Sequence record: OR532817.1
Length of the DNA: 64,000 bases
Reading direction: 5' to 3' (one strand)
The position numbers and the translations under genes are program-made. A model generated the notes under the pieces. That model was not told where the DNA came from and ran no database searches. It saw nothing but the letters and a program-made list of their open reading frames with translations. Positions 39,001-43,996 of this stretch are shown here, in pieces; within the stretch, counting starts at the first letter, position 1, and every line of letters begins with the position of its first letter.

Positions 39001-39030
39001 AAAAAGGGGAGCATATTAGCTCCCCTTTTT
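39001..39030. terminator. Bidirectional intrinsic terminator
   Basis: AAAAAGGGGAGC-atatta-GCTCCCCTTTTT. Confidence 0.85.
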
Positions 39031-40047
39031 TATTATTGTCATAATTTCATTCAAAGATGTAGGTGATACGGTTTCGGTCCACCCATCACCGAATAATTCT
39101 TTTGTTAAGTGTCTTGCTTTTATGGTTCTTTTTATTTCTTTTTCTATGTTAAATGCATCATTACAATTTTCATATACTTTGTGGTATACAACATTCAATT
39201 TGTACTTACATTTATTTTTATATGAACCCATTCTGTGTTTGATATTCTTTGTTATACCGAATTTATAACCAACTATATTATTATAATCATCAGATACTTC
39301 TAAAATGTATATACCTGAACTAAAATCAGAAGATTTATAACCATTTTTGTAACTAACAGAATTACACAAAGGACACCCTTTATCTCGCATAAAATTGTCA
39401 TATGTCATAGACCATGTATAATTGCATTTACAAGTTAAAATGACTTTACTAAAAACACCATTAAAGTTCTTTTCATCTATTAATTCAAATTTAATGCCAG
39501 TTTCTTTGCTTTTAATTTTTAAATTCTCATTTAATTCATTTATACTGTATTTGTGAGTACCTGAACATTTCAAACAACCAATATTATTACTGAAAAATGA
39601 ATCATAAGTGGTAGTATTCCATTCGTATGCTTCAGAATGTTTAGTATTGTCATTGCATTTTAGTTTTAAATATGTTTTTGTTTTATTATATTCATCAAAC
39701 CCGAGGAATTCCAGTGTCCCACCTCGTTTAATGCATTCATTTTCCACATTTTGAATTAAAATTTCAGGTGTTAACTTATTCAATGAAGGCTTTCTGAACT
39801 TTTTTGATTCTATATTTCTCAGATATCTATATAATTTGTTAATTCTGTAATTATTATAAGTTATATTATCATGTGTTATTGAAGTAAGTGTATTATTACC
39901 TAACCATTTTTCTTCAATAATGAATCCATTGAATTTTATATTAAATTTGGATAACCTTTTCGATAAATCGTTGAAATATTCCCATGGAGTTCTGGAATTA
40001 TAGTTAACGTGAACTAAAATAATATCATCTGGTAAAGATATTATCAT
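39016..40047 (-). CDS. Putative free-standing homing endonuclease (Cys/zinc repeats plus C-terminal GIY-YIG-like domain)
   Basis: Repeated xxC...W...YDxF....GCxxC units; C-terminal SGIYIL...YKFGITKN..HR...IEKEIK...FGDGWTET. Confidence 0.65.
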   Translation of the reverse strand: MIISLPDDIILVHVNYNSRTPWEYFNDLSKRLSKFNIKFNGFIIEEKWLGNNTLTSITHDNITYNNYRINKLYRYLRNIESKKFRKPSLNKLTPEILIQNVENECIKRGGTLEFLGFDEYNKTKTYLKLKCNDNTKHSEAYEWNTTTYDSFFSNNIGCLKCSGTHKYSINELNENLKIKSKETGIKFELIDEKNFNGVFSKVILTCKCNYTWSMTYDNFMRDKGCPLCNSVSYKNGYKSSDFSSGIYILEVSDDYNNIVGYKFGITKNIKHRMGSYKNKCKYKLNVVYHKVYENCNDAFNIEKEIKRTIKARHLTKELFGDGWTETVSPTSLNEIMTIIKKGS

Positions 40048-40663: not shown

Positions 40664-40702
40664 AAAATAGGTCAGTACTGAAAAGTACTGACCTATTTTT
40701 TT
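40664..40702 (-). terminator. Intrinsic terminator after the frameshifted chaperone extension
   Basis: Perfect 16-bp stem AAAATAGGTCAGTACT-gaaa-AGTACTGACCTATTTT, a few nt beyond the stop at 40709-40711. Confidence 0.8.
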
Positions 40703-40708
40703 CTGATT

Positions 40709-40930
40709 TTATCGCCCCTCATTTTGTTTACGGACTTTCTTGTTGTATGCTTTAACCATCAAGTCTCGTTCAGTTACTGGCATATTAAGTAACATTTCAT
40801 ACGAGGTATTATCAATATATACAGCAGCTTCCATTAATGCTTGTTTAATTTCTTGCTGATTAAACTCTATGTCTCGTATGTATTTTTCTATTTCAGTTGC
40901 CTCTAACTGGAGAAGCTGAGATCGAAAAAA
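40709..40930 (-). CDS. T-frame extension of the tail assembly chaperone, reached by -1 frameshift (missed by the ORF track)
   Basis: 74 codons from the slippery site: FFRSQLLQLEATEIEKYIRDIEFNQQEIKQALMEAAVYIDNTSYEMLLNMPVTERDLMVKAYNKKVRKQNEGR*. Confidence 0.75.
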   Translation of the reverse strand, partial: FFRSQLLQLEATEIEKYIRDIEFNQQEIKQALMEAAVYIDNTSYEMLLNMPVTERDLMVKAYNKKVRKQNEGR

Positions 40931-41763
40931 CGGGTAATATCATACACCAAATCTTCAATAACCCATTCATGATTACATTCACTACATTCAACCTGCATCG
41001 TGTGTTCAACACCAGTATTTTGCATTGTGTTGATTTCATCCTGAATAGTTTTAAGAACGTCTTTTGACTGATCTCCTACCCATTCTGAAATAAATTCTCG
41101 TTCAGTCACTTCATCCCCGTCTGGAGTGATAATTTTAGAGATACTATAAACGATACCGTCGAAGTTAATTTTAGTGATAGGTTCAAAAATATCAGAAATG
41201 AATAGTTTTGCTCGGTCTTCATCACTTAACGACTCATCTAAATCGAGATATTTGGATTTGGACTGAATATTGAACATTCGCTCATTTATATCACATTGTT
41301 CTTTCCATGTAAGTGGTTTAAGTTCAATACTTAATCCATTATTTAAAACTACAGTAGGGATTTCTTTAATATATTTTACTGTATTCAATAGCACATTCAA
41401 ATCACGTTCGATACGACCTTCATGGTCACATTCGGGACATTTTACATTAATATCATAAGTATATTCTTTGGTTGCAACTTTAATTGCAATAAGCAGTTGT
41501 TCGATATCATTGATGTATAATTCATCTGCATTAAGGACGTTCGGGCAGCAATTTTCAATAACTCGTGATACCGCATCCCCGGACATAAGCATATCAGGAG
41601 TATTCAGTACTATTTCATCACGAGCACTGCGAGCACATACCCCAACTTTAATACCTTTATTTCCTAATACGCCATCGGGATATTTAATTACATCATTTGA
41701 AATAAGTTTAGCACTAAGTACTTCAATTTTTGTGTACTTGGCTAGTGGGTTCATTTTACTCAT
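40903..41763 (-). CDS. Baseplate hub / tail assembly chaperone, T4 gp26-like
   Basis: ARDEIVLNTPD; DIEQLLIAIKVAT; two CxxC motifs (CPEC, CSEC); GGAG RBS favours the start at 41763; TATAAATA at 41806-41813 (minus strand). Confidence 0.75.
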   Translation of the reverse strand: MSKMNPLAKYTKIEVLSAKLISNDVIKYPDGVLGNKGIKVGVCARSARDEIVLNTPDMLMSGDAVSRVIENCCPNVLNADELYINDIEQLLIAIKVATKEYTYDINVKCPECDHEGRIERDLNVLLNTVKYIKEIPTVVLNNGLSIELKPLTWKEQCDINERMFNIQSKSKYLDLDESLSDEDRAKLFISDIFEPITKINFDGIVYSISKIITPDGDEVTEREFISEWVGDQSKDVLKTIQDEINTMQNTGVEHTMQVECSECNHEWVIEDLVYDITRFFDLSFSS

Positions 41764-41833: not shown

Positions 41834-43996
41834 ATGGCTGGTACAAGTACGGATTATCTATTACAACAATTGTTAACCAGTAATGAAAAAGCTAATGATA
41901 ATTTATCTGCGATGAGAGATTTATTATCAGAAAATTTGAAAAAAAACGGTTCAAATAATAACAATAATAATAATCCAGGAAACGGAAATAATAGAAGAAA
42001 GAAAGAAAAGATATCATTAAATGATGCTTTAAAAAATATATCCAGAGATGTTAGTGGATTTAGTAGAACTCTCATTAACGGTAGTGCGGATGTTGGAACT
42101 GTTACGAATTCGCTTGGTACCGGAATGAGTAGTGTAATCGGTACATTAGGAAAGGCTGTTCCAGCTATTAGTGGTGTAACTACTGCATTCCAGTTACTAA
42201 TTGAAGCAGGACTATCTGTTTATAATTATCTAAATCAACAACTGGAAATGTATAATAAAATTAATTCCAGTGGTGTTAGTTTATCAAATGGTATGAACTC
42301 TATTCGTACTGGTAGTGCTAATGCGTTAATGAGTATGGACAAATTCGGTAATTCCGTAGTAAAACATGCTGGTGTTATTGCACAATTAAATGGTATATAC
42401 GGTGATGGTGTTAAGGAATATGGTGATTTGCTTGGAACATTACAATTAGCACAGGATAAAATAGGTATATATGGTGTATCACAGGAACAAATGGCAGACT
42501 TAACCGCGAGGAATATTAAATTCCAGAAACAATTTGGTGGTGCAGAATTAATTAGACAAACTAACCAGGAAAAAAGCACACAAGAATTTATTAAAAATAT
42601 GACATCTTTTAGTAAATCAATGGGTGAATCAGTTGATGCAATTTTAAAGAAAACTCAGGATTTTGATAATTCACTTGATGCTCGTGGTTTAGAAGCTGCA
42701 TTGGAAAACTGGGCTGGATTAAGTAATAAAGCTGCTACATTAACTACTGATGCATTTATTCAAGCCGCTGCTGGTATGGGCGATGCAGGAAAATCTTTTT
42801 TTAAAATAATTTCATCACAAGCTGTCACTGGTGCATTACCCACTGAATATATGACTGGTGTTATTGCAGAATTTGCCGAAGAAAACAAAAAAATGTTTAT
42901 GGGTGGTATTACTGATGCAAAGGAAATACGCTCAGCTAACATCAAATGGGTTAGAATGCATAAAGATCAGATTAAGCGTGACATGATGAACCAGATACAA
43001 CTTGGAAACATCGAAGCTGCTAACTTCAACCGAAATCTTCTTGATCTGGAAGCGTCTGCAAATGATCCAAAAAATGGACCAAAACAACGTTTAGAGGAAT
43101 TAACTAATAGATTTAATAATTGGATTAGTAATACATTTATAAAGCCATTTAATCTTTTAATGGATGCTGGGGTTACATGGTTATTAGATATTTCAGATCA
43201 AACAACATCATTTAACCAATTTATATCTACTGTATTCAGTCAGGGAATCGACAAAATAATGAGTATGGTAACTAACTTTTTTAAGAACTTTCCAGTACTT
43301 AGTGATATAGGAAAAACTTTATTCGGTGATTCTTATAATACATTGGTTGATAATGTTGGTGGTTTTATTGGTAATTTAGTAAAAATACCTATACAACTGA
43401 TATCAGTTGTAACAGATATATGGAATGGTAATTTAGCTGGTGCAAGGGAAACTGTACAAAATGCAATTGCTTCATTTAAACAGAATTTCTTGGGTATGTG
43501 GGAAGGTATAAAAGATATCAAATTCAGTTTCAGTGACGTTAAAGACCGCTTGGTTAATATTGTAGAAACACTAAAAAATAAATTAATTAATGCATTTGAC
43601 ATTCTTAAATATGTTTTCGGTGTCAGTGATGAAATGCCAAAAACTGAAAATACAAAAACACCAAGTGCTGAAAAACCAAAAAATGAAAACATAAATACAC
43701 CCAGTAACAGTAAACCGACTGTTAATGATAATAACAGAAAACAACCACAAGTTGATCAAAATGCTTCTAATTATACCCCACCAACTCGTGTGGATGAAGC
43801 TCAAGATAATTACAAAAAATCTCCTGATGATGAAAAAGTTGATAATAATTTACAACCAGTAAATTACGATGAATCAATGGTTGAATTATTAGGACGTGTA
43901 ACATCTGCGTTAGAAAAAGCTAACGAATACAATGTACAGAATTCAAATTATCTTAGAACTATATCTGATAATACTCAAATACAACGTAATAGTTAA
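41834..43996 (+). CDS. Tape measure protein (gp29-like, 720 aa)
   Basis: Ala/Gly/Gln-rich, helical-looking with periodic W/F; head-to-head with the gp26-like gene; TAAATA at 41788-41793. Confidence 0.65.
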   Translation: MAGTSTDYLLQQLLTSNEKANDNLSAMRDLLSENLKKNGSNNNNNNNPGNGNNRRKKEKISLNDALKNISRDVSGFSRTLINGSADVGTVTNSLGTGMSSVIGTLGKAVPAISGVTTAFQLLIEAGLSVYNYLNQQLEMYNKINSSGVSLSNGMNSIRTGSANALMSMDKFGNSVVKHAGVIAQLNGIYGDGVKEYGDLLGTLQLAQDKIGIYGVSQEQMADLTARNIKFQKQFGGAELIRQTNQEKSTQEFIKNMTSFSKSMGESVDAILKKTQDFDNSLDARGLEAALENWAGLSNKAATLTTDAFIQAAAGMGDAGKSFFKIISSQAVTGALPTEYMTGVIAEFAEENKKMFMGGITDAKEIRSANIKWVRMHKDQIKRDMMNQIQLGNIEAANFNRNLLDLEASANDPKNGPKQRLEELTNRFNNWISNTFIKPFNLLMDAGVTWLLDISDQTTSFNQFISTVFSQGIDKIMSMVTNFFKNFPVLSDIGKTLFGDSYNTLVDNVGGFIGNLVKIPIQLISVVTDIWNGNLAGARETVQNAIASFKQNFLGMWEGIKDIKFSFSDVKDRLVNIVETLKNKLINAFDILKYVFGVSDEMPKTENTKTPSAEKPKNENINTPSNSKPTVNDNNRKQPQVDQNASNYTPPTRVDEAQDNYKKSPDDEKVDNNLQPVNYDESMVELLGRVTSALEKANEYNVQNSNYLRTISDNTQIQRNS

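What the first reader, a model, noticed from the sequence alone, without database searches (positions are those of the whole stretch)
40709..41763. Unannotated -1 programmed frameshift extends the gp26-like tail chaperone (lambda G/GT-type)
Seen: the gp26-like ORF ends ...ACC CGT TTT TTC GAT..., giving a T TTT TTC slippery heptamer at 40924-40930 (minus strand). The -1 frame stays open for 73 sense codons to TAA at 40709-40711, and a strong terminator follows only after that second stop. The extension has no ATG with a convincing RBS near its start. Its YEMLLNMPVTERDLMVKAY segment resembles the T-parts of tail chaperones. Known: lambda G/GT-type -1 frameshifts are conserved next to tape measure genes. 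Inference: the gene makes a ~286 aa product and a ~350 aa fusion. Here the chaperone is head-to-head with the tape measure gene, which links T4-type gp26/gp51 to the G/GT paradigm.
Basis: partly seen in the sequence, partly recalled or inferred. Interest (0 to 1): 0.75.

Follow-up and report, generated by a model that had tools for sequence, protein, structure and literature searches.

The report
Frameshift joins phage hub chaperones gp26/gp51
A slippery U UUU UUC site at the end of this Klebsiella jumbo phage's "gp26" gene almost certainly lets some ribosomes slip back one base and add a 71-residue tail, and the long product has the same layout as phage T4's separately encoded gp51, so one gene here seems to make both of T4's two little-understood baseplate-hub assembly chaperones.

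Summary
The window is a RaK2-like Klebsiella jumbo phage. Its PF12322 "gp26" ORF (41763-40903, minus strand) carries an in-frame T TTT TTC at 40930-40924. The -1 frame opens 9 nt upstream of the heptamer and stays open to the TAA at 40711-40709.

The frameshift reading is strongly supported by comparison, not by experiment. The same in-frame heptamer and a 59-91 codon -1 ORF occur in every relative examined but one. These include about 25 divergent lineages and 61 of 61 non-redundant marine contigs. The -1 ORF is under purifying selection from the slip site on (pN/pS 0.10-0.46). It has no conserved start codon. Gene callers start it at different, non-homologous Met positions.

In cyanophages and vibriophages the -1 ORF is the small ORF annotated "gp51 hub assembly catalyst". 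T4 gp51 (249 aa) carries both parts in one frame and aligns across the junction. T4 gp26 is its paralogue and stops just after the FF motif, as the short form does here.

The lambda G/GT analogy is plausible as a mechanism, but family membership is not shown. The tape-measure identity of the neighbouring gene is also unconfirmed. I found no report of this frameshift in the searchable literature.

The parts
40903..41763 (-). 0-frame ORF, the 'gp26-like' baseplate hub assembly chaperone of the PF12322 family. It gives a 286-aa short product, has two CxxC pairs and ends ...RFFDLSFSS. Stop TAG is at 40905-40903.
   Evidence: Pfam PF12322 at 2e-20 and phrog_150 at 1.6e-30. AlphaFold model pLDDT 92.4. 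BFVD matches to 'baseplate hub assembly' proteins of many myoviruses.
40924..40930 (-). Slippery heptamer T TTT TTC (X XXY YYZ) in phase with the 0-frame codons CGT TTT TTC. This is the proposed -1 shift site.
   Evidence: The phase and the T-run are conserved in 24 of 24 lineages and 61 of 61 marine loci. U_UU.U_UU.Y belongs to the efficient class of -1 motifs in E. coli (PMC4066793).
40709..40930 (-). -1 frame ORF read from the heptamer: 73 codons (FFRSQLLQL...) plus stop TAA 40711-40709. It would add 71 new residues to the long product (about 351 aa). It is the homologue of the small 'gp51' ORF of cyanophages and vibriophages and of the C-terminal module of T4 gp51.
   Evidence: phrog_18291 at 6e-31. 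tblastn finds it in 74 phage records with alignments from residue 1. pN/pS is 0.10-0.46 in this frame only. hhalign to T4-type gp51 C-terminus gives E 3e-4 for RaK2-like sequences alone and 4e-6 with all. The model shows three helices, pLDDT 85.
40903..40930 (-). Overlap zone where both frames are coding, from the heptamer to the 0-frame stop.
40899..40916 (-). Weak local hairpin (6 bp, about -6.7 kcal/mol) starting 7 nt after the heptamer. It is only a candidate stimulator and is not supported statistically.
   Evidence: z = -0.5. RNAalifold finds no conserved pairs across 17 relatives.
40664..40699 (.). Perfect 16-bp palindromic hairpin, terminator-like, 10 nt after the -1 ORF stop.
41834..43996 (+). 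Divergent 720-aa neighbour, a virion structural protein. It is called tape-measure-like in the RaK2 record, and that identity was not confirmed here. Context only.
   Evidence: phrog_14121. No Pfam or PDB match. The CBB homologue was detected in virions with 29 peptides (PMC5259590).

Best explanation
The gene at 41763-40903 (minus strand) is the single-gene counterpart of T4 genes 26 and 51, the baseplate-hub assembly chaperones of family PF12322.

Most ribosomes terminate at TAG 40905-40903 and make a 286-aa short form, equivalent to T4 gp26. A fraction slip back one base on U UUU UUC (40930-40924). The P-site and A-site tRNA-Phe re-pair with UUU UUU. Translation then continues in the -1 frame to TAA 40711-40709 and makes a product of about 351 aa. 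Its added three-helix module is the module that sets T4 gp51 apart from gp26.

The two forms share the N-terminal body and differ in one C-terminal adaptor, made at a ratio fixed by the slip rate. This is the logic of lambda gpG/gpGT.

Shown: the heptamer, the open frame, their conservation, purifying selection on the -1 frame from the slip site, the absence of a conserved start, and collinearity with T4 gp51.

Inferred: that ribosomal slippage, rather than another route, joins the frames; the ratio of the two forms; that the common body binds the tape-measure/hub protein and the added module binds a second partner; and that the frameshift layout is ancestral, with T4-type phages having replaced it by two paralogous genes.
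For: 1. Site and frames in the window.

2. Conservation. The in-frame NNT TTT TT[C/T] plus an open -1 ORF is present in the following phages and contigs. RaK2-like jumbo phages: 121Q, Munch, CBB, GAP32, BF, Yen9-04, Kaldavass, XbC2, Vibrio 2.275.O. Other large myoviruses: Phosso, Atu_ph07, RsoM2USA, PA5oct, RAS14. Metagenomic relatives. Cyanophages S-SSM6a, S-WAM1 and S-TIM4, Aeromonas Aeh1, Vibrio nt-1 and Sinorhizobium phiM19. 61 of 61 non-redundant IMG/VR loci. Identity of the 0-frame protein falls to about 21% across these.

3. Constraint at nucleotide level. The wobble T and TTT are kept in 24 of 24 lineages, even where TTT makes up 11-30% of the other Phe codons. The product of the gene-specific probabilities is about 1e-11, which is an upper bound on significance. 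The base after the heptamer is G in 61 of 61 loci. This makes CGN, Arg, in the -1 frame, while the 0-frame residue varies among D, E, G, V and A.

4. The -1 ORF is coding from the slip site. pN/pS is 0.10-0.46 in that frame and 0.5-8 in the other two, and this holds for the first 33 codons.

5. There is no conserved start. The first Met falls at residue 4 to 36 in different lineages. Gene callers give products of 40-67 aa. The window's ATG 40834 is Val in relative L030.

6. No in-frame fusion and no loss of the layout appears among 99 protein clusters.

7. Rosetta stone. T4 gp51 is PF12322 (residues 1-201, 3.9e-52) plus phrog_634 (residues 147-246). The single profile phrog_150 covers the window's 0-frame product at positions 2-224, T4 gp26 at 14-235, T4 gp51 at 13-280, and the -1 ORFs of Aeh1 and phiM19 at 231-280. 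hhalign of the cyanophage-type -1 ORFs against T4-type gp51 gives probability 92.5%, E 5e-7. That alignment starts at the residue after the slip (FRL.. against FKL..). RaK2-type sequences alone give E 3e-4.

8. T4 gp26 and gp51 are paralogues (BLASTP 2e-6). T4 gp26 ends ...EFFELL, encoded TTC TTT, which is not slippery, and its -1 frame closes at once.

9. U_UU.U_UU.Y is in the efficient motif class in E. coli (PMC4066793).
Against: No direct evidence of the trans-frame protein exists: no peptide, no ribosome profiling, no reporter result.

No conserved stimulatory RNA structure or upstream Shine-Dalgarno-like element was found. The window's own hairpin is weak.

The FF dipeptide is also conserved in T4 gp26, where no shift is possible. 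Part of the T-run conservation is therefore protein-level conservation.

In several lineages (121Q, Phosso, nt-1, S-TIM4) a Met lies 4-7 residues after the slip site, next to the 0-frame stop. Coupled re-initiation could serve there.

One lineage (L031-L033) has T TTT TCC, a poor heptamer, yet keeps the -1 ORF.

The link from the window's own extension to T4 gp51 rests on a modest profile score (E 3e-4, probability 39%) plus context. The direct comparison with the cyanophage-type -1 ORFs is weaker still (E 0.003, probability 10%), though in the same register around the P..ER motif.

The function of either form is not shown for any phage of this group.
Confidence: 0.85

Rival explanations
1. 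The downstream ORF is an independent small gene, the 'small gp51'. It would be translated from its own start or by termination and re-initiation coupled to the gp26 stop. On this view the T-run is conserved only because the FF dipeptide matters to gp26.
For: All public records annotate it this way. Some lineages have a Met within 4-9 residues of the slip site, close to the 0-frame stop. FF is conserved in T4 gp26 without any frameshift.
Against: The Met position is not conserved. It falls at residue 22 in 38 of 61 marine loci, at residue 36 in 9, and at residue 33 in the window. The codons before it are under purifying selection and align to T4 gp51 from the first residue after the slip. The window has no ATG, GTG or TTG and no Shine-Dalgarno sequence before 40834. 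The wobble T before FF, and the G after the heptamer, are conserved although the 0-frame residues there vary. T4 gp51 shows that the two parts work as one chain.
Confidence: 0.07
2. The frames are joined at the RNA level. RNA polymerase would stutter on the T6 (A6 template) run and insert one extra U in a fraction of transcripts. This gives the same long protein without ribosomal slippage.
For: An extra U would yield the same product. Two lineages have longer runs: T9 in RsoM2USA and T7 in RAS14. Homopolymer runs are known slippage sites (PMC4066793; PMC5009743).
Against: By general knowledge of bacterial transcriptional slippage, a run of six is shorter than those that slip efficiently, which are usually about nine or more. 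The run is held at exactly T6 followed by C in nearly all lineages. The X XXY YYZ phase is invariant, as expected for tRNA re-pairing.
Confidence: 0.06
3. Chance or artefact: the open -1 frame is a by-product of AT-rich sequence, a sequencing error in a homopolymer, or a decaying gene.
For: The genome is 33% G+C, and homopolymer runs are error-prone in some sequencing chemistries.
Against: The same layout occurs in more than 100 independent genomes and contigs from different laboratories and platforms. P(73 open codons) is about 0.004. Purifying selection acts on the -1 frame.
Confidence: 0.01

Closest known systems
Lambda gpG/gpGT-type -1 frameshift in tail assembly chaperone genes (Xu, Hendrix & Duda 2004; reviewed in PMC5009743)
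   Same: A -1 slip on a heptamer near the 3' end of a phage tail-morphogenesis chaperone gene. It gives a short and a C-terminally extended form that share the N-terminal body. The layout is conserved over wide divergence without a conserved stimulatory RNA. T4 gp51 is absent from the finished virion, and gp26 is listed with it as a hub assembly chaperone (PMC3004832). In several relatives the gene sits next to tube and tape-measure genes: nt-1 and phiM19 have a tail-tube gene just upstream.
   Different: The protein family is different: PF12322, 210-290 aa, with zinc-ribbon CxxC pairs, against small helical or beta TAC families. There is no sequence match and only a faint fold hint to HK97 TAC 2ob9. 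The extension is short (about 60-75 aa). In the window the gene does not lie between the tube and tape-measure genes; it is divergent from a 720-aa virion protein. Binding partners are unknown.
T4 gp51 (baseplate hub assembly catalyst/chaperone, 249 aa)
   Same: Same family, and collinear with the predicted long product. It has the PF12322 body, then F-(K/R)-x-L-L..P-(D/E)-E-I, then a C-terminal ..M-(I)P-x-E-R.. helix module.
   Different: It is encoded in a single frame with no heptamer. It is shorter, and its second zinc motif is degenerate (CC).
T4 gp26 (baseplate hub assembly chaperone, 208 aa)
   Same: Same family. It ends a few residues after the conserved GL.(D/E)FF motif, as the short product here does.
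   Different: In T4 the FF codons are TTC TTT, the -1 frame closes at once, and gene 25 starts at the stop. T4 makes a second product from gene 26 by internal initiation (26'), not by frameshifting.
The small 'gp51 baseplate hub assembly catalyst' ORFs of cyanomyoviruses, KVP40-like vibriophages and phiM12-like rhizobiophages (phrog_634)
   Same: Same position (directly after gp26, in the -1 frame), same heptamer, and the same motif. They align with the window's extension in A6.
   Different: They are annotated as independent 55-63 aa genes. The RaK2-like version has an insertion of about 16 residues and is filed in another PHROG (18291). The direct profile match between the two groups is weak (E 0.003).

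Membership tests
Programmed -1 ribosomal frameshift site (bacterial/phage type) | An X XXY YYZ heptamer in the 0-frame phase that allows both tRNAs to re-pair | tested here: met
   CGT TTT TTC at 40932-40924. The phase is conserved in all relatives. The motif class is efficient in E. coli (PMC4066793).
Programmed -1 ribosomal frameshift site (bacterial/phage type) | The -1 frame is open from the site and encodes a conserved peptide under selection, with no start of its own | tested here: met
Programmed -1 ribosomal frameshift site (bacterial/phage type) | A stimulatory element (downstream hairpin or pseudoknot, or an upstream SD-like sequence) | tested here: not met
   RNAalifold finds 0 conserved pairs. 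The window hairpin has z = -0.5. Only 7 of 24 lineages have z < -2. This feature is not obligatory; lambda G/GT also lacks one, by established knowledge.
Programmed -1 ribosomal frameshift site (bacterial/phage type) | The trans-frame protein is observed | not testable with these tools
   No proteomic or profiling data were at hand. The CBB virion table does not list the homologue.
T4 gp26/gp51 hub assembly chaperone family (Pfam PF12322, phrog_150) | A significant match to the family profile over most of its length | tested here: met
   PF12322 at 2e-20 (73.8 bits against a cut-off of 24.5) and phrog_150 at 1.6e-30. All 60 relatives in alignment A4 match.
T4 gp26/gp51 hub assembly chaperone family (Pfam PF12322, phrog_150) | The gp51-specific C-terminal module (phrog_634 / ..MIPxER.. 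helix) | tested here: met
   It is present, but only in the -1 frame. hhalign of A8 against A7 gives E 3e-4, and A6 against A7 gives E 4e-6, at the C-terminus of gp51. The window's own peptide does not hit phrog_634 directly.
T4 gp26/gp51 hub assembly chaperone family (Pfam PF12322, phrog_150) | Required for hub assembly but absent from the virion | not testable with these tools
   Known for T4 (PMC3004832). For this phage group there is only the absence of the homologue from the CBB virion list.
Lambda G/GT-type tail assembly chaperones | Sequence or fold membership in a TAC family | tested here: inconclusive
   No TAC Pfam hit in 60 members. No PDB sequence hit. Foldseek matches HK97 TAC 2ob9_A at E 1.5, TM(target) 0.49, probability 0.38.
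Lambda G/GT-type tail assembly chaperones | The gene pair lies between the major tube gene and the tape-measure gene, on the same strand | tested here: not met
   In the window the gene is divergent from the 720-aa neighbour, and endonuclease VII follows it. In nt-1, phiM19 and Aeh1 a tail-tube-like gene does lie just upstream.
Lambda G/GT-type tail assembly chaperones | The short form binds the tape-measure protein and the extension binds the tube protein | not testable with these tools
   No interaction data.

The most novel reading that the evidence does not exclude
The -1 frameshift is the ancestral way in which the whole T4 superfamily makes its two hub/tape-measure chaperones from one gene. 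This covers cyanomyoviruses, KVP40-like and Aeh1-like phages, phiM12-like phages, and the RaK2/121Q/PA5oct/Atu_ph07 jumbo phages. In T4 and its close kin, the frameshift was resolved by duplication into a short-only gene (26) and a fused long-only gene (51), which sit head to head. T4 gp26 and gp51 would then be the functional equivalents of lambda gpG and gpGT. That would fill the long-missing 'G/GT' slot of T4-type myoviruses and give a concrete model for the 50-year-old question of what gp51 does.
Probability: 0.45. Interest if true: 0.9.

Novelty: new variant of a known kind. Interest (0 to 1): 0.8.

Why it matters

Most relatives of T4 appear to encode the gp26-like and gp51-like forms as the short and long products of one frameshifted gene. 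If so, the two proteins share one body and differ by one small adaptor module, made at a set ratio. That turns a vague pair of "catalysts" into a testable chaperone model of the G/GT kind.

It would also correct the annotation of many hundreds of phage genomes. In these, the extension is either missed, called as a 40-67 aa hypothetical protein with an arbitrary start, or called "gp51".

It would further be a clean natural example of a frameshift being replaced by gene duplication.

Tried and rejected
1. Conserved downstream RNA stimulator. RNAalifold on 17 relatives gave no pairs. A CTTCT/AGAAG helix that I saw by eye in some clades coincides with the conserved LL and PEE codons and is absent from the window, so I dropped it.

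2. A natural in-frame fusion within the close family. P0061 (345 aa) looked like one, but its extra length is N-terminal.

3. The search for related loci with the 12-sequence alignment failed because it had no conserved stretch. Single proteins were used instead.

4. Structure searches. The gp26 model has no PDB match with E below 0.4. The extension model has no informative match.

5. Direct hhalign of single T4 sequences to my profiles gave low probabilities. Profiles of T4-type gp51 were needed.

6. Tape-measure identity of the 720-aa neighbour. There is no Pfam, NCBIfam or PDB match, so it is left unconfirmed.

7. Literature. Ten searches found no report of a gp26/gp51 frameshift. Subscription journals are not covered.

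The two ORFs were searched, aligned and folded apart.
Full report
WHAT THE WINDOW IS. The region is 99.3-100% identical to Klebsiella jumbo phages of the RaK2 group (Alcyoneusvirus): RCIP0023, Muenster, K64-1 and RaK2. In these records the ORF at 41763-40903 (minus strand) is called 'baseplate hub subunit gp26' or 'baseplate protein'. The stretch after it is annotated in three different ways. In RaK2 it is left empty. In K64-1, RCIP0023 and phiKp_21 it holds a 41-aa hypothetical protein that starts at ATG 40834. In Muenster it holds a 39-aa ORF on the other strand. No record carries a joined feature.

THE OBSERVATION. Read on the minus strand, the ORF ends ...ACC CGT TTT TTC GAT CTC AGC TTC TCC AGT TAG. 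T TTT TTC is at 40930-40924 in X XXY YYZ phase. The -1 frame is closed until 40939. It then runs 73 codons from the heptamer to TAA 40711-40709. The +1 frame closes 10 nt past the stop. The -1 frame has no ATG, GTG or TTG before 40834. A perfect 16-bp hairpin at 40664-40699 follows the second stop. At this composition 73 open codons have a probability of about 0.004. Of 55 ORFs of 100 aa or more in the window, this is the only one with an in-frame heptamer inside a -1 frame that stays open for 50 or more codons.

CONSERVATION IN THE JUMBO-PHAGE CLADE. tblastn with the 73-residue -1 peptide finds 74 phage records. The alignments start at residue 1, which is at the heptamer and not at any annotated start. 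I fetched 14 divergent relatives: 121Q, Munch, CBB, GAP32, BF, fHe-Yen9-04, Kaldavass, XbC2, Vibrio 2.275.O, Phosso, Atu_ph07, RsoM2USA, PA5oct and RAS14. Identity of the 0-frame protein falls to 21-27% among them. I also fetched metagenomic contigs. Every one has NNT TTT TT[C/T] in phase near the 3' end and a -1 ORF of 72-91 codons that opens only 10-76 nt upstream of the stop. The +1 frame closes quickly in all of them. Of 99 protein clusters of the family, 97 end ...(D/N)P.xFF plus 1-15 residues, and none is an in-frame fusion.

IS THE -1 ORF TRANSLATED FROM THE SLIP SITE? Four lines of evidence say yes.

First, in eleven pairwise comparisons pN/pS in the -1 frame is 0.10-0.45, against 0.5-8 in the other two frames. 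For the first 33 codons, which lie upstream of the window's first ATG, it is 0.10-0.46.

Second, the first Met of the -1 ORF is at residue 4, 5, 8, 15, 21, 33 or about 36 in different lineages. Gene callers therefore give products of 40-67 aa with five different starts. The window's ATG 40834 is a Val codon in the 83%-identical relative L030.

Third, the nucleotides are constrained beyond the protein. The residue before FF varies (R, H, N, S, Y, D, A, V), yet its codon always ends in T. The first Phe is always TTT, even in genes where TTT makes up 11-30% of the other Phe codons. The product of these probabilities over 24 lineages is about 1e-11. This is an upper bound on significance, because the lineages are related.

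Fourth, the base after the heptamer is nearly always G. It makes CGN (Arg) in the -1 frame, while the 0-frame residue there varies among D, E, G, V and A.

THE SAME SITE FAR OUTSIDE THE JUMBO PHAGES. T4's own gene 26 (fetched as NC_000866, an accession shown in papers) ends ...GAG TTC TTT GAG TTA CTA TAA. That sequence is not slippery. Its -1 frame closes at once, and gene 25 starts at the stop. RB49-like KFS-EC is similar. Six more distant phages behave differently: cyanophages S-SSM6a, S-WAM1 and S-TIM4, Aeromonas phage Aeh1, Vibrio phage nt-1 and Sinorhizobium phage phiM19. All six have the in-phase T TTT TT[C/T] and a -1 ORF of 69-84 codons beginning FFR.... In 61 of 61 non-redundant IMG/VR loci related to S-TIM4 or nt-1, the heptamer is TTTTTTC followed by G, and the 0-frame stop lies 10 nt on. 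The -1 ORF has 59-69 codons, and its first Met is at residue 22 in 38 loci and at residue 36 in 9. tblastn with two of these -1 peptides finds 163 and 549 phage records.

WHAT THE EXTENSION IS. In those genomes the -1 ORF is the small ORF annotated 'gp51 baseplate hub assembly catalyst' (phrog_634). A 20-sequence alignment shows the window's extension to share its layout and motif, F-F-R-h-x-L ... Y..L.NMP..ERD..., with an insertion of about 16 residues.

T4 gp51 itself (249 aa) matches PF12322 over residues 1-201 (3.9e-52) and phrog_634 over residues 147-246. The single profile phrog_150 (282 positions) covers T4 gp51 at 13-280, T4 gp26 at 14-235, the window's 0-frame product at 2-224, and the -1 ORFs of Aeh1 and phiM19 at 231-280.

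The profile-profile comparisons agree:
- Cyanophage-type -1 ORFs against 30 T4-type gp51 sequences: probability 92.5%, E 5e-7. The alignment starts at the residue after the slip (FRL... against FKL...) and runs to the ...MIPxER... helix.
- All -1 ORFs against gp51: probability 87%, E 4e-6.
- RaK2-like -1 ORFs alone against gp51: E 3e-4, at the gp51 C-terminus.
- The 0-frame family against gp51: E 2e-5, in the N-terminal half.

T4 gene 51 reads through this junction in one frame with no heptamer. T4 gp26 and gp51 are paralogues (BLASTP 2e-6 over 161 residues).

So T4 gp51 is a natural single-frame version of the predicted long product, and T4 gp26 resembles the short one. The 64-kb window holds only one PF12322 ORF and one extension. 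tblastn finds one place per RaK2-like genome.

MECHANISM. U_UU.U_UU.C and U_UU.U_UU.U belong to the H_HH.U_UU.Y class, which is among the most efficient -1 motifs in E. coli. They are under-represented in its genes (PMC4066793). I found no conserved stimulator. RNAalifold gives no pairs. The window has only a 6-bp hairpin 7 nt after the site (z = -0.5). Seven of 24 lineages do have a significantly stable local fold, for example a 12-bp hairpin in S-SSM6a. In many lineages the 0-frame stop lies one codon after the heptamer. The shift rate cannot be estimated from sequence.

STRUCTURE AND FUNCTION. The 0-frame protein folds with high confidence (pLDDT 92.4). It has no solved relative. In BFVD it matches 'baseplate hub assembly' proteins of very diverse myoviruses. 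The best-probability PDB hit is the HK97 tail assembly chaperone 2ob9 (TM 0.49 on the target, E 1.5). This is a lead, not a finding. The extension is predicted as three helices and has no informative match.

T4 gp26 and gp51 are listed as hub assembly chaperones. gp51 is required for assembly but absent from the particle, and its function is unknown (PMC3004832). One record (Acinetobacter phage Octan) already names gp51 a 'tape measure protein assembly chaperone'.

The G/GT analogy, a shared body plus a sub-stoichiometric adaptor, is therefore a reasonable working model. Family membership is not shown. The synteny rule is not met in the window, and the 720-aa neighbour could not be confirmed as a tape measure. 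Its CBB homologue is an abundant virion protein.

RIVALS. Independent initiation or coupled re-initiation fits a few lineages that have a Met close to the stop. It does not fit the window, most cyanophage loci, the selection upstream of the Met, or the collinearity with gp51. Transcriptional slippage would give the same protein and cannot be excluded from sequence, but a run held at six with a fixed phase fits tRNA re-pairing better. Chance and sequencing error are excluded.

AN EXCEPTION. Three contigs of one study (L031-L033) have T TTT TCC. The change is silent in the -1 frame and changes Phe to Ser in the 0 frame, and the -1 ORF is intact. This fits selection on the long product. How the shift is made there is unexplained.

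NOVELTY. Frameshifting in phage tail chaperone genes is a known kind. What is new here is the protein family, the breadth across several virus families, and the implication that T4's genes 26 and 51 are the resolved halves of one frameshifted gene. Ten literature searches found no report. The library lacks most subscription journals, so prior description cannot be ruled out.

Noticed in passing
L031:866-1141, also L032 and L033 (Logan contigs SRR31818010-12): This is the only relative whose heptamer is degenerate (T TTT TCC; the 0 frame reads ..NFS..). The T-to-C change is silent in the -1 frame and non-synonymous in the 0 frame, and the 91-codon -1 ORF is intact.
   Followed up: partly
window 40664-40699: A perfect 16-bp palindromic hairpin lies 10 nt after the -1 ORF stop, between that ORF and the endonuclease VII gene (40538-40044, minus strand). 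It is terminator-like on both strands. The consensus scan scored it only on the + strand.
   Followed up: partly
L011 (Yersinia phage fHe-Yen9-04, NC_042116.1, g243c) and LT960552.1: The gp26/51 homologue is annotated 'Lead, cadmium, zinc and mercury transporting ATPase'. This is very likely an artefact of its CxxC motifs.
   Followed up: no
window 40740-40859 region (Muenster CPT_Muenster_324, L001:7042-7161) and window 40709-40834: Public records place a 39-aa ORF on the opposite strand inside the -1 ORF, or call only the last 41 codons of it. Both look like gene-caller artefacts.
   Followed up: yes
BFVD entries A0A343LED6 and A0A343LED7 (Leptospira phage LE4): A 290-aa protein matches the gp26 model (E 1.8e-6). 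The protein with the next accession (71 aa) is a faint hit to the extension model (E 4.7). The two-ORF layout may reach well beyond T4-related phages.
   Followed up: no
L029:7803-8090 (T4 gene 26'): T4 is annotated as making a second product of gene 26 by internal in-frame initiation, giving the C-terminal 95 aa. T4 thus makes two products that share a C-terminus, whereas its relatives make two that share an N-terminus.
   Followed up: no
MT409116.1 (Acinetobacter phage Octan), hit H356: Its full-length gp51 is annotated 'tape measure protein assembly chaperone'. The source of that name is unknown to me.
   Followed up: no
proteins P0117-P0208 (T4-type gp51): The precomputed Pfam hits include PF28602 beside PF12322. 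This family is not in the local Pfam copy, so I could not read its name or extent. The RaK2-like small ORFs (P0100-P0116) carry no Pfam hit.
   Followed up: no
window 39016-40047 (minus strand): This 343-aa ORF overlaps the stop of the endonuclease VII gene and matches phrog_681 (endonuclease, 4e-55) and an HNH endonuclease family. Relatives annotate it as hypothetical.
   Followed up: partly
L006, L008, L010, L012 (121Q, CBB, BF, Kaldavass): In these relatives about 800 nt separate the -1 ORF from endonuclease VII. That stretch is partly filled with small hypothetical ORFs in Kaldavass. In the window the gap is about 170 nt.
   Followed up: no
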